NCBI GenBank assembly: GCA_002269645.1
Contig: NIVC01001364.1
Span: 124,001-188,000 of the forward strand
Reading direction: 5' to 3'
Source: Macrostomum lignano
Lineage: Eukaryota
DNA: 64,000 nt
How positions within the stretch are numbered: position 1 is the first letter of the stretch; every line of letters starts with the position of its first letter. The translations under genes and the position numbers were made by a program. Below the pieces are notes generated by a model. That model was not told the DNA's origin. It saw nothing but the letters and a program-made list of their open reading frames with translations, and did not search any database. This document shows, piece by piece, positions 5,013 through 41,184 of this stretch.

Positions 5013-5076
5013 GATTTTAGGAACCGCAGACAGCCAGGGGGAGCCAGGGTAATCAATGTCAGCGGCGGTAACCTAC

Positions 5077-5619: not shown

Positions 5620-5649
5620 CTGGGGAATTGTCAGTGAGCAGAACTACAG

Positions 5650-7840: not shown

Positions 7841-7891
7841 TGACACACGATAAAGTTAATTCAAGCCAGCGCAAGTCCTCGTATTTCCTAC

Positions 7892-8239: not shown

Positions 8240-8434
8240 CTGGCGGGAGGGAGGGGAGACAATGGCATTTGTAATAATGGCGGATTAAAACATATCCAAT
8301 AAAGTCCTTTCTGATTAACATGAAGCATTTCTTTGAAAACCATAAAACGGAGTACAGTTTAAACATTGATTCCTTAAAAACTTCAACTTTCCATTTGATT
8401 GTAACAATGGAAGGTTTATCAATTTTAGAAATAT

Positions 8435-8930
8435 AAAATTCCCCGCCAGTTCTAGGAACAGAAAATTCCCCGTTGATTCTAGGAATGGAAAATTACCCGT
8501 CAATTCTAAGAATAGAAAATTCCCAGTTGATTCTAAGAATAGAAAATTCCCCGTTGATTCTAAGAATAGAAATTCCCCGTTGATTCTAAGAATAGAAAAT
8601 TCCCAGTTGATTCTAAGAATAGAAAATTCCCAGTTGATTCTAAGAATAGAAAATTCCCCGTTGATTCTAAGAATAGAAATTCCCCGTTGATTCTAAGAAT
8701 AGAAAATTCCCAGTTGATTCTAAGAATAGAAATTCCCCGTTGATTCTAAGAATAGAAAATTCCCAGTTGATTCTAGGAAAAAATCACCATCAATTCTAGG
8801 AATAAAAAATCCTTATCGATTCTAGAAATAAAAAATCCCCATCGATTATAGGAATAAAAATTCCCGTCTATTCTAGTCATGGAAAATTCCCCATTGATTC
8901 TAGGAATATAAAAGTTCCACTGATTCTAGT
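8435..8930. repeat. Diverged 27-bp minisatellite (ttccccgttgattctaagaatagaaaa)
   Basis: Tandem copies alignable without gaps to the 4434-5012 unit. Confidence 0.85.
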
Positions 8931-10087: not shown

Positions 10088-12031
10088 TCTCTACCTATAA
10101 AAACCAAAACTCTGTCTGTCTGTCTGTGGACAAATTACTTCGCTATGGACTCCCAAACCACTCAACCAAATGACACCAAACTTTACACCCACCCTAAACT
10201 TACTACGGAGAATGTCTTAGGCTACCTTTAAATTTCCCAGACTCAAGTCTTCCTACCCAAAACTACAAAAAACTGCTCAAAATGCGCGATTTTTTCACTT
10301 AATCCTCCATAGCGCCGCTCCACTTCTACCGATTCTCTTCAAATTTGACACAGATAATCTTTAACTATTTTGGAACAATCATGTAAAATTTCGAGTCTCA
10401 AAGTTAATCCTGAGCGGTGCTGTGCACTTTTAAAGTTAGGCTGTTTTTTTCAGCGTAGCAACCACCCCAACCTCCGCCCGCCTGCCTCTCTTTCTCGATC
10501 CCGATCTGGGCCCAGAAGTGTAAAAAGGTTTCAAGATTGACTAACTTTCAGCTGCCATAAGTTTGCTCTACGTAAAGCGATTGACTTCAAACTTGACACA
10601 ATTCTTCATTGACCCATTCTCTATCTAAATGTAAAGTTTCAACTCTGTAACTCAACCGAAAAAGAAACTGTAAGCATGTGAAGTTTGTCTGCTTTTTCTG
10701 TTGTTTGTGCCACTCACTCACTCATTCCTCCAGAGCCAGACGAAGGGTCAGGCGATAGGACTGAATGTACATAGCAAATGTACAGTGTTTTGGAATAACT
10801 TTATTTATAGCCTTCTCTGCAACCCGAGAGTGGAGAGGCTACGTTTAGCCATAACAGTTTAGTGAGAAATTCTAACCACTGCCCTCCCCTCTGTATTGGC
10901 AAACTCTGCAGCAGTTTAACACTGGATGGCAATTGGCAATTGGCAATTGGCAAATCGAGGGAATCCACTATCCAGCATGGTTTGTAAAAGCGAAAGATTT
11001 ATGAAAAGGCGATGCGATGCAATGCAATACAACCCTACTAAATTAGGCACACCATGGAAATTTTAGGTTTCTTTTAAAGGTACTGTGTAAATTTTAAATA
11101 GCCTCCTAAGAAATGCGTATTTCCTTGGTTGTTAGACTGATGCAGACTGCAGTGGAGCTGAAGATACACAAATTCCTTGAAGGGCTGCAAATTGGCAAGA
11201 AAGATGACGTGATCAAAGCATGAGAACAACCATGAGAGTACTACGTCCCACAAACTGGCTTTCCAAGCAGGGATGGGCAGACTTTTACCTCAAAGGCCAG
11301 ATAAAGAATCCAGCTCATAGCTGAGGGGCAGATGAAAGTGGAAAGAAGAAGGAATAGACGATTCGAAGAGAGGAGAGGCGACAAAGGGGATAAAAGAAAA
11401 GATAAAAGATAATAGGAGAGATGAGGGGGTGAGGACGATGAGAGAAGAGGGGAGAGAGGAAAAGCGAGAGGAGAGAGTAGAGATGAGAGAGCAGAGAGCT
11501 GCAGATGAGAGGAGAGAGGAGACAGCAGAGAGGAGAGCAGAAAGGAAACAGGTGAAAGAAGAGATGAGAGAGTAAAGGGAAGAGAGAAGAGATAAAGATA
11601 CATCTCTACATCTCTAAGGTTGTAGAGATGAGAGAGGTGGAAGGAGAGATGAGAAATGAGAGATGAGAGATAAAGGAGAGAGGAGAGTGGAGTGAGAGAA
11701 GAGAGGGAGACAGAGTATAGAAAAGGGAAGAGAAGAGAAAAGAAGAAAGTAGAAAGGAAAGTGAGGAGTCAAAAGAGGGGAAAGAAAAGAGTACAGAGGA
11801 GAGAGGTGAGAGAACATATAATACAGAGATGCCAGATTAAAGAGGGGGATGAGAGAGCAGAGACGAGAGTGAACAGATAAAAGATGGGAGAGTAGAGAGA
11901 ACAGAGGAGAGGTTACAGAGACGAGAGGAGAGAGGAGAGACAAAGGTAGAGAAGTGAGTGAGGAGAGAGGAGAGGAAAGAGGAGAATGGAGAGGGGAGAG
12001 AGTAGAGAGAGGAGAGATAAGAGAGAAAGAC

Positions 12032-12112
<81 letters not shown>

Positions 12113-12902
12113 GGGGGAGCAGAGAGAAATGAGAAGAGATAAGAGATAAAAGATAAAAGAAGAGAAAGGAATGATGAGAGAGCAAAGACGAGAGAGAAAA
12201 GAGGTGAGGGAAGAGACGAGAGAAGAGGGGAGAGATGAGAGAGGAGAGGGGGAGAGAGGAGAGAGGAGAGGAGAGAGAAAACGAAAAAGTAGAGAGGAGA
12301 AAGGAGAGGAGAGAGAAACGAAGAGACAAGAGATGAGATAAGAGAGATGAAAGAGAAGAGAGATGAGGGAAGATATGAGAGAATAGGGGAGAGATGAGAG
12401 AGTAGAGGAGAGGGGGAGAGAGGAGAGAGGAGAGGAGAGAGAAAACGAAAAAGTAGACAGGAGAAAGGAGGGGAGAGAGAAACGAAGAGACAAGAGATGA
12501 GATAAGAGAGATGAAAGAGAAGAGAGATGAGGGAAGATACGAGAGAAGAGGGGAGAGAGGAGAGAGGAGAGACGAGGGACGAGAGAGATGAGAGGAAACA
12601 AAGAGACGATAGAAATTTTAAAGGATCCAAGGGAAGTAGGGAGAGTCAGGGAGAGACCAGAGTTTAGCAATATATGCTTTTAGAGTCAGACAGACATTGC
12701 CTGACATTCTGCGCAGTACCCCAGCCAACAATGTCTCAAACCTTAATTTTACACGAATGTGCTCCATTTTATGTCTACCTCTATCCTACTAACTATTAAC
12801 AAGTTTTTGTTTGTGTATGGCCTTAGATTTCAGAATACATGCAAAAGTAGTTCCGGGTATTGGAATTCCCCGGGTTCAAAATCCGCGGGTTTCAACAGCT
12901 TG
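10088..12902 (+). mobile_element. Non-autonomous Helitron-like element, copy 1 (2815 bp)
   Basis: 5' A|TCTCTACCTATAAAAA followed by a (TCTG)n tract; 3' GC hairpin cccggg-ttcaaaa-tccgcggg then tttcaacagCTTG; internal GA-rich cargo with (GA)n; no transposase ORF. Confidence 0.7.
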
Positions 12903-19140
<6,238 letters not shown>

Positions 19141-20721
19141 TCTCTAACTATAAAAATCAAAACTCTGTGTGTCTGTGTGTGTGTGTGTGTCTGTGTGTGG
19201 ACAATTTTGATCGCTATGGACTCCCAAACCGCTCAACCAAATGACACCAAACTTTACACCCACCCTAAACTTACTACGGAGAATGTCTTAGGCTACCTTT
19301 TAATTTCCTAAATTTGAGTCTTCCTACCTAAAAGTGCAAAAAACTGCTCAAAATGCGCAATTTTTTCACTAAATCCTCCATAGCGCCGCTCCACTTCTAT
19401 GGATTCTCTTCAAATTTGACACAGATAATTTTCAACTATTTTGGCACAATCATGTAAAATTTCGAATCTCAAAGTTAATCCTGAACGGCGCTGTGCACTT
19501 TTAAAGTTAGGCTGTTTTTTTCAGCGAGGCAGCCACCCCAACCTCCGCCCGCCTGCCTCTCTTTCCCGATACCGATCTGGGCCCAGATGTGCAAAATGGG
19601 TTTCAAAATTGACTAACTTTCGACTGCCATAAGTTTGCTCCACGTAAAGCGATTGACTTCAAACTTGACACAATTCTTCATTGACTCATTCTCTGTCTAA
19701 ATGTAAAGTTTCAACTCTATAACTCAATCAGAACAGAAACTGTAAGCATGTGAAGTTTGTCTGCTTTTTCTGTTGTTTGTGCCACTCAATCACTCATTCC
19801 CCCCAGAGCCAGACGAAGGGTCAGGCGATAGGGCTCAATGTACATAGCGAATGTACAGTGTTTTGGAATAACTTTTTAATAGCCTTCTCTGCACCCCGCG
19901 AGTGGAGAGGCGTGGAGAGGAGAGACAGTTTCAGCGAGAGATTCAAACCACTGTCCTCTGTATAGACAAGTCTGCAGCAGTTTAACAGTAGATACAGTAG
20001 ATGGCAAACAGGCAAATTAAGGCGACGCGGGATGGTTTGTAGAAATAGCGAAAAATTAATGAATAACTTATTACAATGCAATCCTACTAAATTAGTTACA
20101 CCATGAAGCTTTTAACATTAAGTTTCGCATAGAGTAACTTTAAATTTTAAATGACTCCTAAGAAATGCGCATTTCCTTGGTTGTTAGACTGCTGCAGAGT
20201 GCAGACTGTGGTGGTGGAGCTGGAGATACACAAATTCCTCTCAGGGCTGCTAATTGGCCAGAAAGGTGACGTGATTAAAGCATGAGAAATGATAACCATG
20301 ATAGTACCGTCCCACAAACTGGCTTTCGAAGCAGGGATCGGTAGATTTTTAACTCAAAGGCCAGATAAAGAATCCAGCTCATGGCTGTGGGCCAGATGAG
20401 AGTGAAAAAGAAAAGGAATAGACTATTAGAAAGAGAGGAAGGGCGAGAGGGGGGTAAGAGAAAAGATATAAGATGAGTGGGGAGAGACGAGTGGGGTGAG
20501 GACGAGGAGAGAACAGAGAATATGGGAGGAGGAAGCGAGAGGAGGGGAGACAGGAGGGAGAGGAAAGAGTAGAGGAGAGAAGAGGAAGAGAGAAGAGGGG
20601 AGAGATGAGACAGAGGATCGATGAGAGAGGAGAGTAGAGAAGAGTGAGAAGAGAATAGAGAACAGAGAGGAGATAGGAGGGGAGAGAGAGGTAGAGAGGA
20701 GTGAGAAGAGAGGAGATAAGA

Positions 20722-20783
<62 letters not shown>

Positions 20784-22131
20784 GAGAAAGAAGAGAGGAG
20801 AAAGGAGAGATGATAGAGTAAAGGGAAGAAGAGGAGAGAGGAAAGAGATGAGATTGTGGAGATGAGAGAGATGAAAGGAAAGATGAGAGAGTAGAGATGA
20901 GAGATGAAGGAAGAAAGAGCAGAGTGCAGAGACAAGAGAAGAGAGTATAGAAGAGGGAAGAGAAGAGGAGTAAGAAGAGAGGATTCAGTAGAGGGGAAAG
21001 AGAAGAGTACACAGGAGAGTGGAGAGTAAAGATGACAGAAGAAAGAGGGGGTAGAGAGCAAAGATGAGAGTGAACGCGATATATGAGAGGAGAGAGGAGA
21101 GTGAAGAGAGAAGAGAGAAGACAAGAGAGGGAGAGAATAGAAGAGGGAAGAGAAGAGAAGGGAAAAAGGAGAAAGGAAAGAGAGGAGTCAAAAGAGGGGT
21201 AAGAGAAGAGTACAGATGAGAGAGGTGAGAAAACATACGAGTATAAGAGAGTAAAGATGGCAGATGAGAGAGGGGAGATGAGAGACCAGAGACGAGAGTG
21301 AACAGACGAGAGATGGCAGAGTGGGGAGAGAAAAGGATAGAAATAAGAGATGAGAGGTGAGACAAAGGGAGAGAGAAGTGAGTGAGGAGAAAAGAAGGGG
21401 AGGGAAGAGAACCGAGACGACAGGGGAAAGAGAGAAAGGACGAGAGAGGAGAGGAAACAGGGGAGAGATTAGAGGAGAAAGAGAGATGGGACAGGAGAGA
21501 GCAGAGAGATGAGAGGAGAGAGAGGGAGAGAGAGAAAGGAGAGAGAGAGGGAAAGAGAGAGGAGAGAACATGCAGAAAGAATGAGAAGAGAGAAGAGAGA
21601 AAAGATAAAAGAAGAGAAAGAAGAGATAGATAAGAGAGCAAAGACGAGAGAGAAGAGAGGTGAGGGAAGAGACGATAGAAGAGGGGAGAGAGGAGAGAGG
21701 AAAGAAGAGAAGAGATGAGAGGAGAGAGAGGAGAGAGTAGAGAGTAGAGAGGAGGGAGGAGAGGAGGGATAAAAGAATAGAAGGGAGAGGGAATAGACGA
21801 GAGAATAGGGGATAGAGGAGAGAGAGAAGAGACGGAGACGAGAGAGAGGAGAGGAAACAGAAGAGAAGATCGAAGTTTCTAAGGATCCAAGGGACATAAG
21901 GAGAGGCAGAGGCCAGAGTTTGCCTGTTCGCAGCACCCCAGCCAACAATATAAATGTTTGCCTCAAATCCTAATTTTTCACGAATGTACTCTATTTTATG
22001 TTTAATTCTAACCTAACTATTAACAAGTTTTTGTTTGAGTTTGACCTCAGATTTTAGAATATGAGTACATGCAAAATAGTTCCAGGGATTGAAATTCCCC
22101 GGGTTCAAAATCCGCGGGTTTCAACAGCTTG
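19141..22131 (+). mobile_element. Non-autonomous Helitron-like element, copy 4 (2991 bp)
   Basis: Junction cagcttg|tctctaactataaaa; ends hairpin-...cagCTTG|T at 22131, after which unique sequence resumes. Confidence 0.7.
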
Positions 22132-22618
22132 TGTACATTATTTCTGAACCAATTAGCAAGTTGTTTACGCCAGCAAGATTGGGCTTCTAAACTTATCGAA
22201 GTCATTTCAGCTGCCTTTATTTCTATAAAATAGCGCATGAATTCTTTTTTGATACTGAGCTTACATTAGAAATCTGTTTTACTAAGTATATGTAGCTGAG
22301 TGGCTCATCTAGTTATTCTAGTATCTGTGGTTACAGGCAGTAGGGCCCTGTGCACCCTAGCGCACCTTAAGCGACATTGTCCCACAGCCCATTCCGCCGA
22401 CTCCCCCGAGCAGGCACACACTCACACAGGAGTGTACAGCGGCCCTAACTTTATTTATCGTTAGGCATGTACACTTCACTGTGCCTTGGGGGTTGGTCTT
22501 CAAGGCCGTTAATTGCACGAGCAGAGCCAAGCTGAGATTTTAATTTAGCGCCAATGTGACTGCACTTAGGAATCGAGCCTGGGCCGCTGGCACATCAGAG
22601 AGCTTACTAACTGCTTAC

Positions 22619-23116
22619 CAGGCCAACCAGCGTCCGCTCATGGTCTTCATCAGTTTCAGAGGCGCCATCGCTGGCAACGGCGCCAAGATCGGGGCCGAAC
22701 GCCACCTCAGAGCAGGTCAGGTGGCTGTCGCCAAGCAGCCGGGCAACCCGCCGCCTAGCCACCTCGGGCTTCTCTGCCGCACTGCCGTCAGCATTGCCTG
22801 GCGGATCCCGCAGGCCGAGCCGCCGGCCCAGCCGCAGCCAGAGCCCGTCGTCCTCGTCAATACGCCGGCGCCATCGGCTGCAGACCAGCCGACAGTTTGC
22901 CAGATCGCCGGGCGCCAGCAGGCCAAGCAGGCGATCCTGCAGCTCAGGCGGCAGCCGGGTGCCGCACAGCGGATCGAGCAGGCGGCTCAGCCGGGCGGAG
23001 CAGCTGTTGAACAGCTGTTGAAGCCCGGCTATGGACAGCTGGTCAACCGCTGCCAGCGCCTGCGACAACAGTGCCGCATTGCTGTTGACGTCACTGGAGG
23101 CGTTGTGATTGATCAT
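22619..23116 (-). CDS. F-box protein, exon 1 (contains the F-box motif)
   Basis: ATG at 23116 with A at -3; F-box motif LPPELQDRLLGLLAPGDLANCRLVCSRWRRRIDEDDGLW; strong donor CTG|GTAAGC at 22619, phase 0. Confidence 0.85.
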
Positions 23117-23443
23117 TCTTGCCCAGCTGCAACAGGAGCCGATCTGGGATGCTTGCAGTGCTGCCTCTTGCAGAATCTAATTATTCGCGACTCACCCACT
23201 AGGAGATGAAGCGATTTTACTGGGGCATGGGGATACCACATGCGCAACACCCAGCCGATCCAGTCAAACCGAAAGGCGTAGAACTAATTATATGACGAGG
23301 CATTTAGCCTTAATAATACAGTTAAAGCTATTCCTGCCGTTTACCCAGTCAATTTTTGCGGTTTTCTTTCATTGATAAGCCACATTTTAGGTCAAAAAGT
23401 AAGTCGCACGGCCGGTGTAAACTAGGGGGTTGCGCATGTATGA

Positions 23444-24660
23444 TGAGGATTGAGGGGCGATTCTACTGGGGCATGAGGATTGAGGGGTGATTCTACTGGG
23501 GCATGAGGATTGAGGGGCGATTCTAATCGGGCATGAGGATTGAGGGGCGATTCTAATCGGGCATGAGGATTGAGGGGCGATTCTAATCGGGCATGAGGAT
23601 TGAGGGGCGATTCTAATCGGGCATGAGGATTGAGGGGCGATTCTAATCGGGCATGAGGATTGAGGGGCGATTCTAATCGGGCATGAGGATTGAGGGGCGA
23701 TTCTAATCGGGCATGAGGATTGAGGGGCGATTCTAATCGGGCTGAGGACTGAGGGGCGACTCTAAGTGGGCATGAGAATTGAGGGGCGATTCTACTGGGG
23801 CATGAGGATTGAGGGGTGATTCTAATCGGGCATGAGGATTGAGGGGTGATTCTAATCGGGCATGAGGATTGAGGGGTGATTCTAATCGGGCATGAGGATT
23901 GAGGGGTGATTCTAATCGGGCATGAGGATTGAGGGGCGATTCTAATCGGGCATGAGGATTGAGGAGCGATTCTAAGTGGGCATGAGAATTGAGGGGCGAT
24001 TCTACTGGGGCATGAGGATTGAGGGGCGATTCTAATCGAGCTGAGGATTGAGGGGCGATTCTAATCGGGCTGAGGATTGAGGGGCGATTCTAATCGGGCT
24101 GAGGATTGAGGGGCGATTCTAATCGGGCATGAGGATTGAGGGGCGATTCTAATCGGGCATGAGGATTGAGGGGCGATTCTAATCGGGCTGAGGATTGAGG
24201 GGCGATTCTAATCGGGCTGAGGATTGACGGGCGATTCTAATCGGGCATGAGGATTGAGGGGCGATTCTAATCGGGCATGAGGATTGAGGGGCGATTTTAA
24301 CTGAGGATTGAGGGGCGATTCTAACTGAGGATTGAGGGGCGATTCTAACTGAGGATTGAGGGCGATTTTAACTGAGGATTGAGGGGCGATTCTAACTGAA
24401 GATTGAGGGGCGATTCTAACTGAGGATTGAGGGGCGATTCTAACTGAGGATTGAGGGGCGATTCTAACTGAAGATTGAGGGGCGATTCTAACTGAGGATT
24501 GAGGGGCGATTCTAATTGGGCATGGGGATCGAGGGGCGATTCTAATTGGGTATGAGAATTAAGGGGCGATTCTAATTAGGCATGAGGATTGAGTGGCTAT
24601 TACTAATTGGGAATGACAATTGAAAGGTCATTTTAGGGGGGCATGAGGATTGAGAGGCAA
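23444..24660. repeat. 30-bp minisatellite (gaggattgaggggcgattctaatcgggcat) with 28- and 24-bp variants
   Basis: About 40 tandem units directly visible. Confidence 0.95.
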
Positions 24661-27619
24661 TTCTAGATGGGCTTTAGGACATGAGTTATGAAGTCTAAAG
24701 GAGATTCTAGTCCCATTAGTTTAGTAAGTATTTATTACTATATTCAATTCATTTTAATAGAATACAATTATAATATATTACAAAATGAAACTTATATAGC
24801 TCTTTCTTTATATACAAAATATTCCCTAATTTTTCTGCTCTATTTGATTATTCATAGAATATATATATATATTATTTTAACAATTGTATAATATCATATT
24901 AGGCAAAGAATAAAATGATGAAGTATTAGTTCAAAATGTAATGCATAATAAGCATTGAGTGATACTATATGATCTACATATAAGTTTTGCATTCGAGTTG
25001 GCAGCTATCTAGGAGGAAATATGCATTAAACCTGGCCTACTGGTTAATCCACTTAGCTTTAGATATACTATTATATTTTTATTATATAAAGTCATATAAA
25101 TCAATTTTTATTTAAATATATATAATTCTAGGTATAATCAATTGTATTAGGCCTATCATTTTATCGTTTTCTAAGTTTACAAAAAGAATATTAACAAATG
25201 TTTATTTGCAATTGAGTAGCTTTTTATTAATATAATAAAATGTTAAGCTCTTCTTAATATTAATACTAAGGACAAGGTAATTAGGCCCTAGAGTTCTACT
25301 TATAGCTATAGGCCTTAGCTATAACCATAGGAAATTAATAGATATCAAGGTTTTTAGGCAAAACAAAATATTTACAATTATCTATAATGGCTAAAAGATT
25401 AAGTTATAAAAATACATATTCTAAATATAAAATAGGCCCTAGCAGACAAATGATCTTTCTAGTATATATTGCCAAAAGCTGGTGGCACTCATTATTTGTA
25501 CATGTGCAAATAGTATTATCATTATTTACATAGTAGCTAACTAAAATAAATACTAGTTTTATGTATTGTATAGTACTCATAGCTATATTCTAATTACATT
25601 TGACCTCAAGTCAAATCCATCTTTTTGATGGCAAATGAGTTCCATTCACATTCTTTTCTTTTGAAATACCTTTTATACTTTACTTTACTAATAGTAATAT
25701 TAATAATATTTCATATGATACTAAGACTAAAAGCTAATAAAAATTAAGGCCTAAGCTATGAACATATGAATTATACCTAAACTTCATTTATTGGCTTTAG
25801 TTAGTTTGTTATTAAATAGGGGTGGGAGGAGAAGCGCTGCCTATGGATCAGCCCTAGGGGGGCTCTGCCACATGGATCTTGCTGTGGGCCATATTACCAA
25901 GGGCTTAGAGCCTAAGAGACTACTATGAGAACCAGAGCTCAGGACTCTGGGGAGAGCATGGAGCATTGGAGCTACTAACCTAAACCTATGGACTAAGACA
26001 CCACCAATCCAAAAGTGGAAATCAGGGACAGTGCTAGGACTGAGTCCACCTAGACCACCCCCCCAGCAGACAAGTCTTTGGGTATGCGCAAAAAATTGGA
26101 ATTGAAAAAATCTTGGGTTACTACTAAAAGTGTTCCAAGAGCAGGAAGACCTTGAAATCTATGGAAATGGCTTAAATTAATTGGAGCGAGTCTTGGGCAG
26201 CTTATTTACCAAGGGCAAGTCTCCTATCAGACGGCCAAGAACCTCTCCTATAGGGCTACGAGCCTCAAGGCTTTTTTATTGCCTAGCTCTAAACAATTGG
26301 AGCATTGCTAAAGCAAAGCTAGCTATTGGAGTGAATCTAGAAGGCTTGTATCCAAGGGCAAGTCTCCTATCAGGCAATATATAGCAACAACCTATAGGGC
26401 TGCAAGCCACAAGGGCATCACCTATCCAGCTTTATATCGAAGGCCAGGCCAAGGGGTCGGGAAGGGGGCACCCAGGGCAACAGGACCTGGACTCAGCTGG
26501 TATCCCTAGTATAGGATAAACATCTAACCCAGGACTCTATTCCACTGTCAAGATGAGAGCAGGGAACTTCCAGAGGAGCCAGTAGGTGGACCAAGGCTAT
26601 GGAGCATGCTCATCGAGGCAAGATTGATAAACTTTAGAAAATTAAGGTGGCTTGAGTGCCAGGCTAAAACCGGGGAATAAAACATTGGAAATCAAACTTA
26701 GAGGATCATACAACCTCAGGGGCTCAGCCTTAGGGTTGGCATGCTACTGGGCTCTACTGTACATCTTTGTGAATAGTCATTTCTTTCCTACAGGGCAGGT
26801 GCAACCGGGGGGGCTTAAGTCTTGTCTTAGCCACACTGCAGTCCAAAGATCATACTCACTCTGGGCATACCCCCTAAACCAAGGCCGAGAGCCAAAAAAA
26901 CTAATTGGAATGAAAAAGGATTATTTTTAGAACAGGCACCTAGCCTTCCAGGGCGGACCCTTAGAAAATTGGGCTAGCTAGAACTAGGCCAATCGGATTG
27001 TGCACAACCCTTGGACAAGCCACCAAGGAGGCAGCCAGGGCAAAAATAGTCAAAGACCATCTTTATGTTTAAAGATAATTTAAAAATTCATTATGAAATT
27101 AAAATATATAAAGATAATATTGAGTAGACTAGTCCTTGATAAGATTATTTATAAGGCATTTATTTTATGTACTGTGTAAATAATACTTGCAACTTAGTAA
27201 ATAATGATTGACTAATAGTAGACAAAATGATTTAATACTTGTGAGGCTGTGACAGATTATTAAATTTAATATTATGTAAATAATTAATAGGCCTCAGACC
27301 TATGTTTTGTATTTTGTATCATTTATAGCTTGCCTATAGCAATAAGGATACTAGTTGTACCTGTACCAGAACCAGGGTACCAAGCCCTAACAAAAATGGC
27401 CACTTATAGTTATATTTGGATAATTACCACAAATTAGACCTACCACAATAGTATAGGCCTAATACTAGATAGGGTAGGCTAGGCTGGAGTAGGTCCTAGG
27501 CTAGCCAAAAATAGGGTTTGGGATTTGGGTACATTTCTACCATAGGCCTAGGCAGTAGGCCTAATTTCTAAAAAAAACTTTTTAATATATAGAATAGAAC
27601 TAGGCCCTAGTAGGCTCTA

Positions 27620-29656: not shown

Positions 29657-29935
<279 letters not shown>

Positions 29936-30379
29936 AGTCGTACTAAAATGCTGCCCTTTTATCCAACATCTTTATTTTCTCATGCTGACTGCAGTGCAGT
30001 TTCAGGCAGCATAATAATAATATGTAAGCCGGTTTGGCACTTCACACTGCACCGATGGACAGAAAAAATCGCATGCAGCGGAGCTGACTGAAATCGATAC
30101 TCAGACACATCTACAAGACAGAAGACGGGCAAGAAAGACAGGCATGGCGAGAAACGAGCATATCAAGCGTTATTGAAGAAATTTTTGTCATTTCCCTGAT
30201 TCCCGATGTGTTTATTCGTCAGGGCAGTCGTGAATACAGTATCCTGTAGGATGCTGGAGTGCAGCACCGTGTGAGCCAGACGAAGCCGAATCCGTCTGAT
30301 TAGGATGTACAGGAAAGCCTAGCATTGGATAAAAAAATCTCGTGCCCTTTGCTTCGCTAAATTCTACGTAAAACAAAAT

Positions 30380-31488
30380 GCAACTGGTCCGTACCCACAA
30401 TCCCAACCAACTTTATTACCCAATGTACGCACAATCCCAACCAACTTTATTACCCAATGTACGCACAATCCCAACCAACTTTATTATCCAATGTACCCAC
30501 AATCCCAAACAACTTTATTACCCAATGTACGCACAATCCCAACCAACTTTATTATCCAATGTACCCACAATCCCAAACAACGTTATTACCCAATGTACGC
30601 ACAATCCCAACCAACTTTATTACCCAATGTACGCACAATCCCAACCAACTTTATTACCCAATGTACGCACAATCCCAACCAACTTTATTACCCAATGTAC
30701 CCACAATCCCAAACAACTTTATTACCCAATGTACGCACAATCCCAACCAACTTTATTATCCAATGTACCCACAATCCCAACCAACTTTATTACCCAATGT
30801 ACGCACAATCCCAACCAACTTTATTATCCAATGTACGCACAATCCCAACCAACTTTATTACCCAATGTACGCACAATCCCAACCAACTTTATTACCCAAT
30901 GTACGCACAATCCCAACCAACTTTATTATCCAATGTACCCACAATCCCAAACAACTTTATTACCCAATGTACGCACTGAAACCCCAACCAACTTTATTAC
31001 CCAATGTACGCACTGAAACCCCAACCAACTTTATTACCCAATGTACGCACTGAAACCCCAACCAACTTTATTACCCAATGTACGCACTGAAACCCCAACC
31101 AACTTGATTACCCAATGTACGCACAGAAACCCCAACCAACTTTATTACCCAATGTACGCACTGAAACCCCAACCAACTTTATTACCCAATGTACGCACAG
31201 AAACCCCAACCAACTTCATTACCCAATGTACGCACAGAAACCCCAACCAACTTTATTACCCAATGTACGCACAGAAACCCCAACCAACTTTATTACCCAA
31301 TGTACGCACAGAAACCCCAACCAACTTTATTACCCAATGTACGCACAGAAACCCCAACCAACTTTATTATCCAATGTACGCACAGAAACCCCAACCAACT
31401 TTATTACCCAATGTACGCACAGAAACCCCAACCAACTTTATTACCCAATGTACGCACAGAAACCCCAACCAACTTTATTACCCAATGT
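30380..31488. repeat. Minisatellite: 34-bp unit (cccaatgtacgcacaatcccaaccaactttatta) switching to a 37-bp unit near 30975
   Basis: Tandem copies directly visible. Confidence 0.97.
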
Positions 31489-32734
31489 AAGCAAAGATTT
31501 TGCCCGCAACCAATCATGTGCTGCAATGTGCTGCAATGTGCTGCTGTGTGCTGCTGTTATACTTTACGCATTAAAATCGACCAAACTCCTTACCACTGAA
31601 GCAACACAAAAAATTGGATGTACAATTTACACTCGAACTCTAGACTGCTAACAATGTACTCCAGTCTTTACATTTCACCCCATATCTAATATTCATGCTC
31701 ATGCGTAGATCATGCTACCCTCATGATGAAGGTTCTTGGAATCTAGTTCTGCATTTTATTATCTTTGGATTTAATTTTCCGTGACCGCCAGCCAGGACTT
31801 GTTTTGAAAAGATTGAAAGAGCATAGCAACTCAGGAGCAGAGCAACTCAGGAAATTAATTCGCTAATGGGTCACGCTTCAATGTGGGCGTGAGGATTTTC
31901 AGTTTTTTATTAATAAATATACATAATCTTGGAGATCCGCGTCCAATTTGAGCCACTTCTAGGCCCCGTTTTTTCTCACAACTCCTTCCTTTTATCGCTT
32001 CCCAACTTTCTCGGGGAAAAATAATAATTTTAATAGCAGCTGGCGGCCCAAGCTAGTCCTGAACAGATTTATAATGAACAGCAGCGGGAGGGGGCAATGA
32101 ATCTTGATCAGCCCAAACCGAAGGGGATATTTCTTTGCAAGGCAATTTCCAATCTTAAGCAGACCTGCTCGTATATTTGATGAAGCGCAGGTAAGCGCCA
32201 AGGCTAACAATATGGTGGCATAATCTGTCATTTTGCACCGGGCCACTTGCAGTATATATAGTCTGGCTTTTAATTTCTTGCCTGCATGGCTTATTCAAAC
32301 TTTTTTCTTCTCTTCTCTCTTCTCTTTAATAGACATTCAGCTGTAAACAGAGGAGATTATAGGACCGAAACGACCGCCATTGGGCTGTAGTTCTCCTAGC
32401 CTCTGCCTGCTTTCTCCTCTAACTCTCATTTATTCTGCAGTGCTTCTGTCGTTGCGCCAGTGATTGATAATCTGCTTCCTGCTGCTATACTAGGGGGTAG
32501 CGTGCTAATTTTACTTCATCATGAGCTAATTTTTTACGACCGGGAATGCCCGGAGAATGGAGTCGAGAAAATTCAAAAGCAGCTGCTAGCTGTAGAAGCG
32601 GGGTTGGTTTCAGTGTTTATTTTTATATGGTTATATGAAAAAATAGTTTGATTTAGCAAAGTTTCAGGTGAAAGTTTGATTGAATAACAAACAGTCAGTG
32701 CTGCAGGTCAAATCAATGTAATGCATGTTTTAGA

Positions 32735-33860: not shown

Positions 33861-34288
33861 AGTGTACGTAGGTCGTTTCTTTCCTTTCCATTGACACACC
33901 ACCCCACTCCGCTTTCTCACTGTGCAGTGTACATAGGTTGTTTATTTCCTTTCCATTGACACACCACCCCACTCCGCTTTCTCACTGTGCAGTGTACATA
34001 GGTTGTTTATTTCCTTTCCATTGACACACCACCCCACTCCGCTTTCTCACTGTGCAGTGTACATAGGTTGTTTATTTCCTTTCCATTGACACACCACCCC
34101 ACTCCGCTTTCTCACTGTACAGTGTACATAAGTTGCTTATTTCCTTTCCATTGACACACCACCCCACTCCGCTTTCTCACTGTACAGTGTACATAAGTTG
34201 CTTATTTCCTTTCCATTGACACACCACCCCACTCCGCTTTCTCACTGTACAGTGTACATAGGCCGCTTATTTCTTTTCCATTGACACC
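33861..34288. repeat. 65-bp minisatellite, ~6.5 copies
   Basis: ttccattgacacaccaccccactccgc recurs every 65 bp. Confidence 0.95.
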
Positions 34289-35492
34289 ATTGTCTACTGT
34301 AGGGCGTATGCCGATTATTAACAGATAGTCCAATAGACGTGTCTAAGCTGATATCTAAATTTACAAAAAGCAGACAATTGAAAAAATGGATTCAATAATG
34401 AAATTCTAAAAATAAGTGCATTAAATTATCAATACGAGTAAAACTCAAACTCAAAGCATTGTTCTCCAGACATGATTATTATTGGGTGTGAAACTGTACT
34501 ATGACCCAGTGTATATTCCCACTGTATATTCTCAAAGCGTTAAAAAGGCTCAACTAAAAGTCCTAGGCAGATGGGATAGAAACAAGTTACTTTTATTAAT
34601 ATTCCAAGACTACTATTCCCCAGCAGACACAGGACACAGGGAGATTACAGCTGAAAGATTAGGGAATAAACTTTGTTTTACTCATAGTCCGCCATAAAAT
34701 TGATTGAAGAATAATAATCCGCGCAATCTGCCTGCCGGTTTTGGAAAATGAATTTAGTCAAGAGCTCCCCGACCCATCCAAGCGGTAAGTAAGACTTCCG
34801 TCTTCAAAGGTCTTAAGGTCTGGGGGGAGCTGCGGGAAAGCTAGAGCAAAGAGATGTTGCGTGTCGCAATGGTCTAGTTAGTTAAAGTCAATTAGCCGCT
34901 ATTGAGGACCCCTGACGAAAATACTGCACATATCTTTAGCCCTGTGTGGGAGGTTGGAAGCCGAAACTATGCCAAAAGTTCCATATTTCGAAAAATTAAT
35001 TTTGGATCCGATTCTATTCTTCATCAAGCACAGGGGCCGCGTGTTCTATCTTGGGGACATGTTGTCAAAAAATCCTTCTAAAGGAGATTAAAGAAAAAGA
35101 CAAAGAGAAGCCGAGTCAAAGCAAAGAGCGAGGATATTCCGAGACGGTCGCACTTCCGCTGCCCCAGAGTGTAGGGACAATCTCCATCTACTTATACCCC
35201 TGATTAGATCCGCAATTCTTCTTGGGTTCCTGGAGTTCTCGAATGTGGCAAGTCCTGGGCGAGTCCGAAATCGAATAATACGCCAATTCCCTGGGCGGCT
35301 CCTCAAATGCTCGAATGGAATGAACGCCTGTTCAGTGTATGCAGAAGAAATGTATGACAGTTCGTTTAGATAATACTATATACACAGTTGAGCCCTATCA
35401 GTGCGTTTCACGAATGATTGTTGCTTGTACATACAAGCTAGTAAAAGTACAATTGCGCAAGCTGCAAAACAACAACAACAACAACAACAACA

Positions 35493-35830
35493 AGTCGCTT
35501 GGACGGACCAGGCCGGCGCGGTGATACAAAGCCGCGTTGGTCACTCGCTCGTAGCCGATCTTGAAGGCGGCGCGCAGCAGGCCAGCGTGCACCGCGTCAA
35601 CTTGTTGCTCGAGCGACTTTGTCGGCGTCCAGGTCTCGGCGTTGTACAGCAGAACGGTCTCGATCACCGCCTGGAACAACGCCGCCCTCTGGCGGTCAGG
35701 TAAGGCCTCGGACTGCAGGACTGCCCTCACAGAACGAAAGGCAGCCCAGGCAAGCCCGCGGCGACGCCGCAAATCCTCGCGGACGCCGGGAACCAGACCG
35801 CCGAGGTAGACGAACTGCTGATAACGCGGA
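35493..35830 (-). mobile_element. Fragment of a non-LTR retrotransposon (RTE-like) ORF2, end of RT and downstream region
   Basis: FVYLGG...RRRRGLAWAAF...VIETVLLYNAETWT...LLRAA matches the FxYLG and LLYxxETW motifs C-terminal to LINE RT domains. Truncated, and abuts a (CAA)n run. Confidence 0.8.
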
Positions 35831-36458
35831 AGCTGTAAAAAGAACGATTGTAACGTTCCATCAACGTCATCGGTCATGGCATGTGGCCACGACCACGAGG
35901 CATGTGGAGCTGTAGTAGGCATGTGGATGATGTGGCGGGCCAGCTGGTGTGGTACAGCTGGTCGCTTGAACTGATCAGGCGATTGATCAGGACTGAGTAT
36001 GCGTCACACTACCCAGAAGATAAAATTATTTCTAATACATTCTGCAGCGCGAAACAAATGTCTGTCCTAGTACGCACTAGCGCATTTAATTCAGCGAAGA
36101 ACAATAGTGGAAAATGTGGCGTCTGCTTGCTCACTGTCAATAAGAACAGGGAGAGACAAGTGCTGGCGTACTTGCTTTGCAAATACTCGAATTAGGAATC
36201 TTACTCCGCGCAAGGGAGAAACAGATAGCATCCGACGTGTCGTATTATCAGAGCTGAAAAAACCTTCATAAGTGCAACTCAATGCACTCATCTTGAACCC
36301 TTTGCACGCAGAAACAATGGGTCTACATACTTCCCACAGCCCTTTTTCTCTTTAAATAACTTAGGAACTCATTTCTTCCTGCTTGCGAAGCTGATACTTC
36401 AATCCTTATCTAACCCTTGTCTCCAATTTTGTCGATAGCCTAACAATCGCAGCACCCT

Positions 36459-36795
36459 AATCTACTCCTTTCCTCCAGTTGTGTCTATGGTCTTACTCTC
36501 ACCACCCTGATCTACTCCTTCCCTCCAGTTGTGTCTATGGCCTGACTCTCACCATCCTGATCTACTTCTTCCCTCCAGTTGTGTCTATGGCCTGACTCTC
36601 ACCACCCTGATCTACTTCTTCCCTCCAGTTGTGTCTATGGCCTGACTCACCACCCTGATCTACTTCTTCCCTCCAGTTGTGTCTATGGCCTGACTCTCAC
36701 CACCCTGATCTACTCCTTCCCTCCAGTTGTGTCTATGGCCTGACTCTCACCACCCTGATCTACTCCTTCCCTCCAGTTGTGTCTATGGCCTGACA
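36459..36795. repeat. 50-bp minisatellite, ~6.5 copies
   Basis: gtgtctatgg recurs at 36481, 36531, 36581 and onward. Confidence 0.95.
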
Positions 36796-38629: not shown

Positions 38630-39201
38630 TTCTCAGCACAGACAGGTATTTTACAAGCAAAATAGTTTTGCCGATTCTTTCTACTCAGTAGGCAAATCTT
38701 CCGTCTCGAAATCAGTCTCTATGCGCCGCGTGCTGCAGAATACGGACTGGCGGATTAACCCCGCTATCTGGCAGTCTGCGACCCGCGCACCTGACGTTAT
38801 TTAATGCCGCTAATCCCACTTGTCAGCCGGTCCGACGCCCTCGCCTACTTCCAAATGAAATTTAAAAATTGATTTTTTGTCGAGTCAGCGACTGTGAAAT
38901 CAGACTCGGGTCAGGTTGAGCCAGAAAAGCTTCTTCGAGCGTCACCGGGAGGCCACTCGAATAGGTGCGTTGTCTCAATTATTCCCCATCCCTGAGAGGC
39001 CGCCCAATCCCAAAGCGCTGGCAACCCATCCAGGCTTGACAATCCTTATTGGTTGTGCCTTGAAGCCAGCCCCTCTCGCCTCTGCGGGGATAAAACAGAT
39101 CGACTTGGCTGCAATCCGACCCCCTCTTCGCTAGATCATCAGTCCCCTATATCCCTTAACGCACAGATTCATCCGGTAGAGACTCGACCTCGGCAGCAAA
39201 A

Positions 39202-40039
39202 ATGCAATGCAGCGTTCTGGCGCCAATGCTGGCGCTTCTGATGGCGGCGCTTATCTGTGCATCGTCCACTCGAGCTGACGTGAGTCACTTCTGACCTCTC
39301 ACTTTTGTCTTTAATATTCTTACCAGTGAATGCCAAGTTGCACCGGTTCGATACTGCCTGATCACCTTTGTAGTCGCTTCATCACCACGGTGCGTCAGAC
39401 CAGGAGCTTCAAGATCAAACCGAAAAGAGGGCCTACTTTGATCCGATGGGATACGGCAAGAGGGCCTACTTCGATCCCATGGGATACGGCAAGAAGAAGA
39501 GGGCCTACTTCGATCCCATGGGATACGGCAAGAAGAAGAGGGCCTACTTCGATCCCATGGGATACGGCAAGAGGGCCTACTTCGATCCCATGGGATACGG
39601 CAAGAGGGCCTACTTCGATCCCATGGGATACGGCAAGAAGAAGAGGGCCTACTTCGATCCCATGGGATACGGCAAGAAGAAGAGGGCTTACTTTGATCCC
39701 ATGGGATACGGCAAGAAGAAGAGGGCCTACTTTGATCCCATGGGATACGGAAAGAAGAAGAGGGCCTACTTTGATCCCATGGGATACGGAAAGAAGAAGA
39801 GGGCCTACTTTGATCCCATGGGATACGGAAAGAAGAAGAGGGCCTACTTTGATCCCATGGGATACGGCAAGAAGAAGAGGGCCTACTTTGATCCCATGGG
39901 ATACGGAAAGAAGAAGAGGGCCTACTTTGATCCCATGGGATACGGCAAGAAGAAGAGGGCCTACTTTGATCCCATGGGATACGGCAAGAAGAAGAGGGCT
40001 TACTTTGATCCCATGGGATACGGCAAGCGCAGTACTTAG
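39202..40039 (+). CDS. Multi-copy neuropeptide precursor (247 aa; 16 x AYFDPMGY-amide); exons 39202-39279 and 39374-40039
   Basis: Exon 1 (aaaATG) encodes the signal peptide MQCSVLAPMLALLMAALICASSTRA(D) and ends GAC|GTGAGT. The 94-bp intron ends ctttgtag|. Exon 2 reads SLHHHGASDQELQDQTE-KR, then 16 AYFDPMGYG units separated by KR or KKKR, ending KRST*. Confidence 0.93.
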
Positions 40040-40971
40040 CAAAATCATCATTTGAGACAGCAAATTTGAATTTATTCAGCTTGTCAACCAACAAACACAA
40101 AAATGTCCAGATATTGACTTCGTCCTTGAAACTGTTAGAAGCGAGGAGCGACGAGCCGTGAAAGACTCTGACTCGTCTTTGTTTCTGGCTCAACAAAGAC
40201 TTCTCTAAGTTGCGCCACAGTTTTCTAGCTCTTTGTTCAGAGTGTATTAAACCAATGAAAGATTTCGAAATATAAAAAACAACAAGGCACTTTTATGTAG
40301 CACAAATAAGCCTTGATGGCTTGATCCTCAAGTGTGCACTGTAAAAATGCAATTAAGGGTTCAGTTAGTTAATCATGGCATTGATGTCGTTTGCATATGC
40401 CTGACGATTAGAAAGTTAGATTAACATTCTATGCTACTCAAGACCAGTAGTATTTCAACAACTGTGTTAAAAGTATCGACAAGAAGCTTATCTCGTATTA
40501 ATATTTTACTGAGCAGCATCAGAGATTCACAAGTAACCAAATCTTGCACGAAAAAGCAGAAAGTCGTTCCGTTTTGAAGATTTTTTAAAGTAACTTGATG
40601 AAGCCAAATCTGTAGCAATTTCTTGACTTGAAATCGCTTTCAACTTTTCTTCTTTGGCTTTGTCTTTTCTGTGCGTCTTTCTGCCAGCTGCACGAAGTGT
40701 TTTCGCCTTTGTGTCCTCAGTTGATGTCGCCCTTTCTGGGTACATCTTTAGGCAATCCTGGCATTATGGGTATTAAAGGCTTAGAGTGGGCTGAAACACG
40801 CCAGTTTGTCTCTAAGGTGCGGAACAGAGAGGCTAAACAGGATTACCTATTGCCAATCAAAATGATTGACACTTCCCTGCGTGTCTGACAGTAACCTGGC
40901 GGACAACTGCTTGAAGTGCGATGGTTCATTAATCCAGAAATTAATGAATTTCTCTCTAGTTTTAGTTCCTC

Positions 40972-41184
<213 letters not shown>

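What the first reader, a model, noticed from the sequence alone, without database searches (positions are those of the whole stretch)
39202..40039. Neuropeptide precursor releasing 16 identical AYFDPMGY-amide peptides; its signal-peptide exon is missed by the ORF track
Seen: a 25-26-aa signal peptide exon, a canonical 94-bp intron, an acidic His-containing spacer, then 16 AYFDPMGY-G units bounded by KR or KKKR. Differences between peptide units are all synonymous (TTT/TTC, GCC/GCT, GGC/GGA, one CCG), and length changes remove exactly two Lys codons. Known: prohormone convertase cleavage at basic sites, carboxypeptidase E trimming and PAM amidation of C-terminal Gly would give AYFDPMGY-NH2. Inference: a functional, highly amplified signalling peptide. 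The F-D-P-hydrophobic core recalls pedal-peptide/orcokinin-type and planarian FDPxx(F/Y)amide peptides, but I cannot assign it, and this exact peptide may be undescribed.
Basis: partly seen in the sequence, partly recalled or inferred. Interest (0 to 1): 0.75.

Follow-up and report, generated by a model that had tools for sequence, protein, structure and literature searches.

The report
Flatworm FDP-amide neuropeptide precursor gene
This is a real two-exon gene of the flatworm Macrostomum lignano that encodes 16 identical copies of a small secreted signalling peptide (AYFDPMGY-amide). It belongs to a neuropeptide family already known from planarians and blood flukes, so it is a solid but fairly ordinary find.

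Summary
Exon 1 (39202-39279) encodes a signal peptide. A 94-nt GT..AG intron follows. Exon 2 (39374-40039) encodes an acidic His-rich spacer and 16 copies of AYFDPMGY-G, each followed by KR (4 copies) or KKKR (12 copies).

All six variable DNA columns in the array are silent in this frame only. Four other minisatellites in the same window vary mostly non-synonymously in every frame.

A public Macrostomum lignano protein model (UniRef A0A1I8ITX1) contains exactly the predicted exon-exon junction. That model is truncated after 4 copies, carries a spurious 5' extension and is misnamed "Allatostatin". The window is therefore M. lignano or a very close relative.

The peptide fits the flatworm spp-15/npp-26 family:
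- Planarian FDPIQF-amide and FDPIMF-amide, confirmed by mass spectrometry and expressed in brain and nerve cords.
- Schistosome SYFDPILF and SYFDPIIY, confirmed by mass spectrometry and marking one neuron cluster.

M. lignano has at least two paralogues: 15 copies of AYFDPINY-G, and at least 5 copies of QVYFDPIDN.

Verdict: a genuine neuropeptide precursor and a new member of a known family. Expression, processing and receptor in M. lignano are untested. Interest is modest.

The parts
39090..39095 (+). TATA-like ATAAAA, 112 nt upstream of the ATG. This is a candidate core promoter element only.
   Evidence: Pattern scan. Not tested further.
39202..39279 (+). Coding exon 1, 26 codons: MQCSVLAPMLALLMAALICASSTRAD, which is the signal peptide. 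The Kozak context is GCAAAAATGC.
   Evidence: The uncharged hydrophobic core runs V5-C19, with 9-residue Kyte-Doolittle means up to 3.0. Small residues sit at -3/-1 for cleavage after S22 or A25. An in-frame stop lies 14 codons upstream. The same sequence is found in M. lignano protein P0088.
39280..39373 (+). Intron of 94 nt, phase 0: GTGAGT donor, CTGAT branch-like site, pyrimidine tract and TAG acceptor.
   Evidence: Retaining the intron gives a stop after 30 codons. Intron GC is 0.44, against 0.53 for the exons. tblastn of P0088 skips exactly this stretch.
39374..39430 (+). Start of exon 2: the acidic, His-containing spacer SLHHHGASDQELQDQTE plus the first KR cleavage site.
   Evidence: Identical in P0088.
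39431..40030 (+). Array of 16 units AYFDPMGY-G-(KR or KKKR). Each is predicted to give AYFDPMGY-NH2.
40031..40039 (+). C-terminal Ser-Thr and the TAG stop codon.
40246..40251 (+). ATTAAA, a candidate polyadenylation signal 207 nt after the stop codon.
   Evidence: Pattern scan. Not tested further.

Best explanation
This is the Macrostomum lignano member of the flatworm spp-15/npp-26 neuropeptide family.

Shown from the sequence: the two coding exons, the 16 identical units, the basic sites and the Gly residues.

Inferred steps, all following the established metazoan amidated-peptide pathway:
1. The two exons are spliced into a 247-aa preprohormone.
2. The signal peptide (cleaved after about residue 22-25) takes it into the secretory pathway.
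3. A prohormone convertase (PC2 type) cuts after each KR or KKKR.
4. A carboxypeptidase E-type enzyme trims the basic residues.
5. Peptidylglycine alpha-amidating monooxygenase converts the exposed Gly into a C-terminal amide.

The result is 16 molecules of AYFDPMGY-NH2 ([M+H]+ 962.408) per precursor.

By analogy with planarian spp-15 and schistosome npp-26, the peptide is most likely released by a small set of neurons in the brain, nerve cords and pharynx. It probably acts on an as yet unidentified G-protein-coupled receptor.
For: 1. Coding signature. All 6 variable columns are silent only in the frame that joins the signal-peptide exon, and the length variants are whole Lys-Lys codon pairs. 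Silent-only variation has a probability of about 2e-4 by chance. In four control minisatellites in the same window (two with enough in-register units to count), variation is mostly non-synonymous in all six frames.

2. Independent gene model. UniRef A0A1I8ITX1 of M. lignano (P0088) carries ...MQCSVLAPMLALLMAALICASSTRAD|SLHHHGASDQELQDQTEKRAYFDPMGYGKR..., which is the predicted junction.

3. Paralogues in the same species with the same architecture. P0087 has a signal peptide, an acidic spacer, EKR and 15 copies of AYFDPINYGKKR. P0125 has a signal peptide and at least 5 copies of QVYFDPIDN flanked by RKR. The peptide core is conserved while the signal peptide and spacer are not, as is typical of neuropeptide precursors.

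4. Family relatives.
- Smed-spp-15 has a signal peptide, 8 copies of FDPIQFG flanked by KR, and FDPIMFGR. FDPIQF-amide, FDPIMF-amide and the Gly-extended intermediate were detected by mass spectrometry. Expression is in cerebral ganglia, ventral nerve cords, sub-epidermal cells and pharynx (PMC2953531).
- Sm-npp-26 peptides SYFDPILF, SYFDPIIY and EHFDPIIY were detected by LC-MS/MS (PMC9495596). NPP-26 is the unique marker of the 'Neuron 3' cluster in the miracidium (PMC11349301).
- Unit-by-unit alignment to the Trichobilharzia precursor scores 65 bits, E = 4e-18 pairwise.
- A profile search returned only flatworm proteins.

5. Processing machinery. A PC2 homologue expressed in the M. lignano nervous system is documented (PMC4490696).
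Against: - I examined no RNA reads, peptidomics or in situ data for M. lignano. The public protein model may be partly ab initio, so splicing is corroborated but not directly observed.
- The signal peptide was judged by hydropathy and the -3/-1 rule only, because no SignalP was available. Its n-region also lacks a basic residue.
- Position 6 of the peptide is Met, where every other family member has Ile (the paralogue has Ile).
- HMMER and BLAST E-values between repeat precursors are inflated by the shared KR periodicity. Unrelated repeat precursors from Lingula and Branchiostoma scored better than true family members. Homology therefore rests on the motif, not on the E-values.
- Near-identity of the units means the array is young or homogenised, so purifying selection had few mutations to act on.
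- The count of 16 copies depends on correct assembly of a 600-bp tandem array. An older assembly's model shows only 4 copies.
Confidence: 0.85

Rival explanations
1. The array is a non-coding minisatellite that happens to be open in several frames, and the upstream 'signal peptide' ORF is a coincidence.
For: The window is packed with minisatellites of period 20-85 bp, some with periods divisible by 3 and open in all six frames. The 39-bp array itself is open in two + frames and two - frames.
Against: Variation is silent in one frame only, and that is the frame which joins in phase to a signal-peptide exon across a canonical intron. The control minisatellites lack this pattern. The same protein and two paralogues exist as M. 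lignano protein models, and the peptide core is conserved in planarians and flukes.
Confidence: 0.02
2. The gene is real and its product is secreted and processed, but the peptide is mainly an exocrine or non-neuronal product. Examples would be a secretion of gland, epidermal or pharyngeal cells, a pheromone, or a defence peptide, rather than a neuropeptide.
For: Planarian spp-15 is also expressed in unidentified sub-epidermal cells and pharynx. S. mansoni NPP-26 shows weak signal in apical gland cell nuclei. High copy number suits bulk secretion. No expression data for M. lignano were available.
Against: In both species studied, the dominant expression of the family is neuronal: cerebral ganglia and nerve cords in the planarian, and a neuron cluster co-expressing complexin and 7B2 in the schistosome. 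A short amidated peptide with dibasic processing is the classic neuropeptide design.
Confidence: 0.08
3. It is an allatostatin (as the UniRef entry is named) or an orcokinin/pedal-peptide-type precursor, not an spp-15/npp-26 member.
For: UniRef names A0A1I8ITX1 'Allatostatin'. The FDP start resembles the start of mollusc pedal-peptide-type units such as PFDPLGSGFIS in Elysia (P0098).
Against: There is no Pfam allatostatin hit for the window protein or for P0088, even at E <= 10. The Y/FxFGL-amide ending of allatostatin A is absent. Orcokinin and pedal peptides are longer (11 residues in the Elysia unit; 13-15 in those I recall), are not amidated, and end in GF-type motifs. The present peptide has 8 residues, ends in Tyr-amide, and matches the flatworm FDPIx(F/Y) peptides in both length and register.
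Confidence: 0.04

Closest known systems
Schmidtea mediterranea secreted peptide prohormone-15 (Smed-spp-15, GenBank BK007013; Collins et al. 2010, PMC2953531)
   Same: Both have a signal peptide, a short non-conserved spacer, and then many tandem copies of one short peptide with the core F-D-P-(I/M)-x-(F/Y). Each copy is followed by Gly and a basic site, so the peptides are amidated. The planarian peptides, including the Gly-extended intermediate, were seen by mass spectrometry. Both animals are free-living flatworms. Planarian expression is neuronal.
   Different: The planarian peptide is a hexapeptide (FDPIQF-amide or FDPIMF-amide) without the N-terminal Ala-Tyr, and it ends in Phe rather than Tyr. 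It has 8+1 copies against 16. The spacers are KR only, whereas here most are KKKR. Position 4 of the core is Ile, against Met here.
Schistosoma and other trematode npp-26 (Smp_071050; also the Trichobilharzia, Clonorchis, Opisthorchis and Paragonimus proteins found here)
   Same: These are octapeptides in the same register: x-(Y/H)-F-D-P-I-x-(F/Y), for example SYFDPIIY, TYFDPIMY and AYFDPIMF. They are multi-copy, flanked by KR or RKR, and lie behind a signal peptide. They were confirmed by MS in cercariae and mark a specific neuron cluster.
   Different: The trematode units have no Gly before the basic site, so the peptides are free acids. There are 4-7 copies, often of several variants. The present gene has 16 identical amidated copies.
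M. lignano paralogues A0A1I8IE52 (C-terminal part; 15 copies of AYFDPINYGKKR) and A0A1I8HWB0 (QVYFDPIDN, at least 5 copies)
   Same: They come from the same species and have the same architecture. AYFDPINY differs from AYFDPMGY at 2 of 8 residues.
   Different: They have different signal peptides and spacers and lie at different loci (not in this window). The third paralogue lacks the amidation Gly and starts with Gln, like planarian spp-16 (QFDPIMY).
Orcokinin / pedal-peptide family
   Same: The units have an N-terminal x-F-D-(P/S/E)-(I/L) start, and the precursors are multi-copy and flanked by KR.
   Different: Those peptides are longer (11 residues in the Elysia unit seen here; 13-15 in those I recall), are not amidated, and end in G-F-type motifs. 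Flatworms have a separate pedal-peptide-like gene (ppl-1 in PMC2953531). This is a resemblance only.

Membership tests
Flatworm spp-15 / npp-26 (FDPIx[F/Y]) neuropeptide precursors | Tandem copies of a 6-8-residue peptide ending in F-D-P-(I)-x-(F/Y), in trematodes preceded by x-(Y/H) | tested here: met
   There are 16 copies of A-Y-F-D-P-M-G-Y. The length and register match SYFDPIIY, TYFDPIMY and AYFDPIMF. The one deviation is Met for Ile; the M. lignano paralogue has Ile.
Flatworm spp-15 / npp-26 (FDPIx[F/Y]) neuropeptide precursors | Every copy flanked by basic cleavage sites, in a small precursor with an N-terminal signal peptide and a non-conserved spacer | tested here: met
   The sites are EKR, KR and KKKR. 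The hydrophobic core and -3/-1 residues fit a signal peptide. This was judged heuristically; no SignalP was run.
Flatworm spp-15 / npp-26 (FDPIx[F/Y]) neuropeptide precursors | Amidation signal (Gly before the basic site), as in planarian spp-15 but not in trematode npp-26 | tested here: met
   16 of 16 units have Gly. The spp-15 units are FDPIQFG-KR. The trematode units lack Gly.
Flatworm spp-15 / npp-26 (FDPIx[F/Y]) neuropeptide precursors | Occurs in Platyhelminthes | tested here: met
   The signal peptide and spacer are 100% identical to M. lignano A0A1I8ITX1. The profile search hits were all flatworms. Among the 216 fetched proteins, KR-flanked multi-copy FDP[IM]x[FY] occurs only in flatworm entries.
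Flatworm spp-15 / npp-26 (FDPIx[F/Y]) neuropeptide precursors | Detectable sequence similarity to family members | tested here: inconclusive
   Scores were phmmer E = 4e-7 (Opisthorchis), 7e-6 (Paragonimus) and 8e-8 (M. lignano P0125), and BLASTP E = 4e-18 against Trichobilharzia. However, unrelated KR-repeat precursors scored as well or better (Lingula 1e-30, Branchiostoma 4e-20), so the E-values alone do not show homology.
Flatworm spp-15 / npp-26 (FDPIx[F/Y]) neuropeptide precursors | Neuronal expression and mature peptides detectable by mass spectrometry | not testable with these tools
   This is known for Schmidtea and Schistosoma. No M. lignano data were reachable.
Allatostatin A (the name given to the UniRef entry) | Peptides ending in (Y/F)-x-F-G-L-amide, and a match to the Pfam allatostatin model | tested here: not met
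   The peptide ends in P-M-G-Y-amide. No allatostatin model appears in Pfam scans of the window protein (E <= 0.1) or P0088 (E <= 10).
Orcokinin / pedal peptide | Non-amidated peptides of 11 or more residues, with an N-terminal xFDxI/L and a C-terminal G-F-type motif | tested here: not met
   The peptide has 8 residues, is amidated, and ends in Tyr. Only the FDP start is shared with, for example, Elysia PFDPLGSGFIS.

The most novel reading that the evidence does not exclude
The FDPxx(F/Y) peptides may be older and wider than the planarian and fluke records suggest.

Two ancient lineages. Macrostomum sits on the earliest branch of rhabditophoran flatworms (my own knowledge). It already has both an amidated type (AYFDPMGY-amide, AYFDPINY-amide, like planarian spp-15) and a Gln-initiated non-amidated type (QVYFDPIDN, like planarian spp-16 QFDPIMY). 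Two paralogous lineages would then predate the split of Macrostomorpha from all other rhabditophorans. The free-acid peptides of flukes would be a secondary loss of amidation.

Possible members outside flatworms. Unidentified eukaryotic transcripts in Logan and ENA encode KR-flanked ALPFDSMNY-G, QLPFETLNY-G and RLPYEVMGF-G units (P0109, P0115, P0150). These hint that the family extends beyond flatworms, or links to a wider bilaterian family such as orcokinin/pedal peptide.
Probability: 0.2. Interest if true: 0.45.

Novelty: new member of a known kind. Interest (0 to 1): 0.25.

Why it matters
- **Corrected gene model.** This gives a complete model for a M. lignano neuropeptide gene. The public entry is truncated after 4 of 16 copies, fused to antisense retrotransposon sequence, and misnamed 'Allatostatin'.
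- **Family age.** It places the spp-15/npp-26 family at the base of rhabditophoran flatworms and suggests that amidation is the older state.
- **Practical use.** M. lignano is transgenic-tractable, and npp-26 peptides are considered as targets in schistosomes. A free-living model with a highly expressed orthologue could help find the receptor.
- **Limits.** None of this overturns current views, because the design and the family are standard.

Tried and rejected
- **Homology search with the full spliced precursor.** It found only two bacterial copper-chaperone (PF04314) proteins with Gly/His/Met-rich tails that contain 'FDPMGYGHG'. I rejected these as low-complexity coincidence: they have no KR sites and no repeat register.
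- **Pfam hits.** The hits were Tal-1A_2A (11-residue model) and OmdA. No single stretch passes on its own, so I rejected them as repeat artefacts.
- **Exact look-ups.** The 197-aa in-window ORF was not on record.
- **Rfam and tRNA scans of the window.** Both found nothing.
- **Identifying the organism from the EFHD2-like exon at 326-709.** The best hits were only 45-54% identical (insects, abalone, crinoid), so this was uninformative. The organism came instead from the representative search.
- **Literature searches.** Searches for AYFDPMGY, FDPMGY, FDPINY and related strings returned no relevant paper.
- **Papers I could not read.** McVeigh et al. 2009 (PMC2749192) is not held, and I did not read Koziol et al. 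2016. I therefore cannot exclude that the M. lignano gene is listed in one of them or in their supplements.
- **Best-scoring non-flatworm hits (Lingula LSMDPFNM-G, Branchiostoma DPLSPIVNGQ-G, a fungal repeat protein).** I read these as generic KR-repeat similarity, not homology.

Full report
**What is in the sequence.**
- An ATG at 39202, in the context GCAAAAATGC, opens 26 codons: MQCSVLAPMLALLMAALICASSTRAD.
- A 94-nt intron follows at 39280-39373. It has a GTGAGT donor, a CTGAT branch-like site, a pyrimidine tract and a TAG acceptor.
- Exon 2 (39374-40039) continues in phase with SLHHHGASDQELQDQTE-KR, 16 units of AYFDPMGY-G, and then Ser-Thr-stop.
- Units 1, 4, 5 and 16 are followed by KR and the other twelve by KKKR. 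All length variation is therefore exactly two Lys codons.
- The spliced product has 247 residues.
- TRF reports a 39-bp period, 15.9 copies and 95% matches.
- A degenerate back-translation of YFDPMGYG hits 16 times, against 0.03 expected.

**Why the ORF list misses the gene.** A prokaryote-type ORF list splits the gene into a 30-aa ORF and an ORF that starts at the Met inside peptide 1.
- The exon-2 frame is closed by the TAG that ends the intron.
- Retaining the intron stops translation after 30 codons.
- An in-frame stop lies 14 codons upstream of the ATG.
- Splicing is therefore the only way to place a signal peptide in front of the array.

**Is it more than one more minisatellite?** The question matters because the window is full of tandem arrays with periods of 20-85 bp. 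Some have periods divisible by three and are open in all six frames. The 39-bp array itself is open in four frames, so openness proves nothing. The pattern of variation does.
- The six variable columns are GCC/GCT, TTT/TTC, CCC/CCG, GGC/GGA and the double change AGG to CGC in the last unit.
- All are silent in the proposed frame. In the other two + frames they change the amino acid at 6 of 6 and 5 of 6 columns.
- Only 18% of random single changes to the unit are silent, so five independent silent changes have a probability of about 2e-4.
- I ran the same count on four control minisatellites in the window. Two kept enough in-register units to be informative, and both show mostly non-synonymous variation in every frame (for example 1-3 silent of 5, and 4-7 of 20).
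- The caveat is that the units are nearly identical. The array is therefore young or homogenised, and few mutations are available to judge.

**Signal peptide.** No SignalP was available, so this part is heuristic.
- The uncharged hydrophobic core runs from V5 to C19, with 9-residue Kyte-Doolittle means up to 3.0. That is too short for a membrane anchor.
- A polar c-region follows, with small residues at -3/-1 for cleavage after S22 or after A25.
- The n-region has no basic residue, which is unusual but tolerated in eukaryotes.

**Independent evidence and the organism.**
- A word-indexed search with the whole precursor found only two bacterial copper-chaperone proteins with Gly/His/Met-rich tails. 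I reject these as coincidence.
- The exhaustive HMMER search of 1.84 billion representatives with exon 2 found two strong hits. Both turned out to be Macrostomum lignano proteins from UniRef.
- P0088 (A0A1I8ITX1, 452 aa) contains ...AAKMQCSVLAPMLALLMAALICASSTRADSLHHHGASDQELQDQTEKRAYFDPMGYGKR.... This is the predicted start, signal peptide, exon junction and spacer, all without a mismatch.
- tblastn places its residues 327-364 on 39175-39288 and residues 362-428 on 39374-39574, skipping the intron.
- The window is therefore M. lignano or something extremely close, and an independent annotation used the same splice.

**Defects of the public model.**
- It breaks off after four peptide copies into unrelated sequence.
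- It has no start Met.
- Its first ~320 residues map to 35111-35835. That stretch is antisense to a LINE reverse-transcriptase fragment, and in this window it is cut off from the ATG by a stop codon.
- Its name, 'Allatostatin', has no support in current Pfam.
- I could not establish whether the model was built from RNA. Splicing is therefore corroborated rather than observed.

**Paralogues.**
- P0087 (A0A1I8IE52) is a 2405-aa fused model. It ends in a second precursor: a signal peptide (MASRNFSTSPLLLLLLLLLGCTAFA), an acidic spacer, EKR, and 15 copies of AYFDPINYG followed by KKR or NKR.
- P0125 (A0A1I8HWB0) has a signal peptide and at least five copies of QVYFDPIDN flanked by RKR, without Gly.
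- The peptide core is conserved between the paralogues while the signal peptides and spacers are unalignable. This is the usual way neuropeptide precursors evolve.

**Which family.** The exact peptide and its fragments occur in none of the 8.3 million full texts searched. A search for YFDP together with planarian terms led to Collins et al. 2010 (PMC2953531).
- Table 3 of that paper pairs Schmidtea spp-15 (FDPIMF-amide, FDPIQF-amide, FDPIQFG; MS-confirmed) with Schistosoma npp-26 (SYFDPILF, SYFDPIIY, EHFDPIIY, TYFDPIAF, and others).
- The supplement gives the spp-15 prohormone: a signal peptide, a spacer, 8 copies of FDPIQFG flanked by KR, and FDPIMFGR. Expression is in cerebral ganglia, ventral nerve cords, sub-epidermal cells and pharynx.
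- The supplement also gives a second gene, spp-16, with non-amidated QFDPIMY units.
- The schistosome peptides were later seen by LC-MS/MS in cercariae as free acids (PMC9495596).
- NPP-26 is the unique marker of a neuron cluster in the miracidium (PMC11349301).
- A profile built from the window protein, the two paralogues and two fluke proteins retrieved only flatworm proteins: Clonorchis, Opisthorchis, four Paragonimus species, Trichobilharzia and M. lignano. Their units include ASHFDPIMF, SHFDPIMF, SYFDPIMF and TYFDPIMY.
- The window protein aligns to the Trichobilharzia precursor unit by unit.

The HMMER and BLAST E-values should not be over-read. Unrelated KR-repeat precursors from Lingula and Branchiostoma scored better than the true relatives. 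The assignment rests instead on four things: an identical octapeptide register, x-(Y/H)-F-D-P-(I/M)-x-(F/Y); the shared architecture; the amidation signal shared with the planarian gene; and the taxon.

**Mechanism.**
- Shown from the sequence: the two exons, the signal-peptide-like N-terminus, 17 basic cleavage sites and 16 Gly residues.
- Inferred from the established secretory peptide pathway: signal peptidase cleavage, convertase cleavage after KR or KKKR, carboxypeptidase trimming and amidation. These steps would give 16 AYFDPMGY-NH2 per precursor ([M+H]+ 962.408).
- A PC2 homologue expressed in the M. lignano nervous system, and essential for post-embryonic development, has been published (PMC4490696).
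- Inferred by analogy with spp-15 and npp-26: release from a limited set of neurons and action on a GPCR. No receptor for any family member turned up in the literature searched.

**Rivals.**
- The minisatellite reading is excluded for practical purposes.
- An exocrine or non-neuronal role cannot be excluded. Relatives also label sub-epidermal, pharyngeal or gland cells, and there are no M. lignano expression data.
- The allatostatin and orcokinin/pedal-peptide labels fail their defining features: C-terminal motif, length and amidation.
- The copy number of 16 depends on correct assembly of a 600-bp array.

**Novelty and value.** The design is textbook and the family is known, so a specialist would not be surprised. 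Three things are new.
- First, a complete, correct model for the M. lignano gene.
- Second, the peptide sequence itself, which I could not find in the literature available to me. McVeigh 2009 is not held, and I did not read Koziol 2016.
- Third, the observation that Macrostomum already carries both an amidated type and a Gln-initiated non-amidated type, mirroring planarian spp-15 and spp-16. This suggests two old lineages and a secondary loss of amidation in flukes.

Unidentified Logan and ENA transcripts encode KR-flanked ALPFDSMNY-G and QLPFETLNY-G units (P0109, P0115, P0150). They hint at relatives outside the sampled flatworms, but I could not trace their source.

Noticed in passing
window 42862-64000 (+): A large tandem array with a unit of about 1.15-1.32 kb (one ORF gap of about 2.2 kb), at least 16 copies, running to the window end. 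Each unit has a ~600-nt segment holding a 197-aa GTG-started ORF (MQMGSDVTIPQAEGSS...; no Pfam hit), followed by 4-8 copies of an 83-85-bp sub-repeat. The copies differ by an S/T replacement, among others. It could be a satellite or a gene family; this is undecided.
   Followed up: partly
window 326-709 (-): The last coding exon of an EF-hand domain D2 (EFHD2/swiprosin)-like gene. The best database hits are only 45-54% identical (insects, Haliotis, crinoid). No M. lignano orthologue came back from the protein collection, even though that collection holds other M. lignano proteins.
   Followed up: partly
window 35111-35922: A fragment of a non-LTR retrotransposon reverse transcriptase on the - strand (ORF 35398-35922). 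The public M. lignano model A0A1I8ITX1 reads through its antisense strand as a spurious 5' extension of the neuropeptide gene.
   Followed up: yes
window 22607-23116 (-): A 169-aa ORF with a clear F-box domain (Pfam F-box-like, E = 1.3e-9). It is probably an exon or a single-exon gene.
   Followed up: no
window 11200-21970 (-): Four copies of a ~3 kb repeat rich in (GA)n/(CT)n, each giving long Ser/Leu-rich pseudo-ORFs, three of which start MDPLKFLSSL. This looks like low-complexity DNA rather than genes.
   Followed up: no
window 784-8928, 23443-24665, 29657-31493, 33861-34287, 36453-36794, 40972-41184: A very high density of minisatellites and microsatellites (periods 4, 20-34, 50, 65 bp). 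Several have periods divisible by 3 and are open in all six frames, for example 27 bp at 4436-5023. They served as controls for the coding test.
   Followed up: yes
proteins P0109, P0115, P0150 (Logan/ENA, source organism unknown): Small precursors with KR-flanked amidated units ALPFDSMNY-G, QLPFETLNY-G and RLPYEVMGF-G, plus a conserved C-terminal ...IPDGYIMG. The C-terminal hexapeptide FDSMNY-amide resembles FDPINY-amide of the M. lignano paralogue. They may be relatives of the family outside the sampled flatworms.
   Followed up: partly
protein P0125 = UniRef A0A1I8HWB0 (M. lignano), not in the window: A third family member with at least 5 copies of QVYFDPIDN flanked by RKR and no Gly. UniRef names it 'AMIN domain-containing protein', which looks like another automatic misnomer.
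   Followed up: partly
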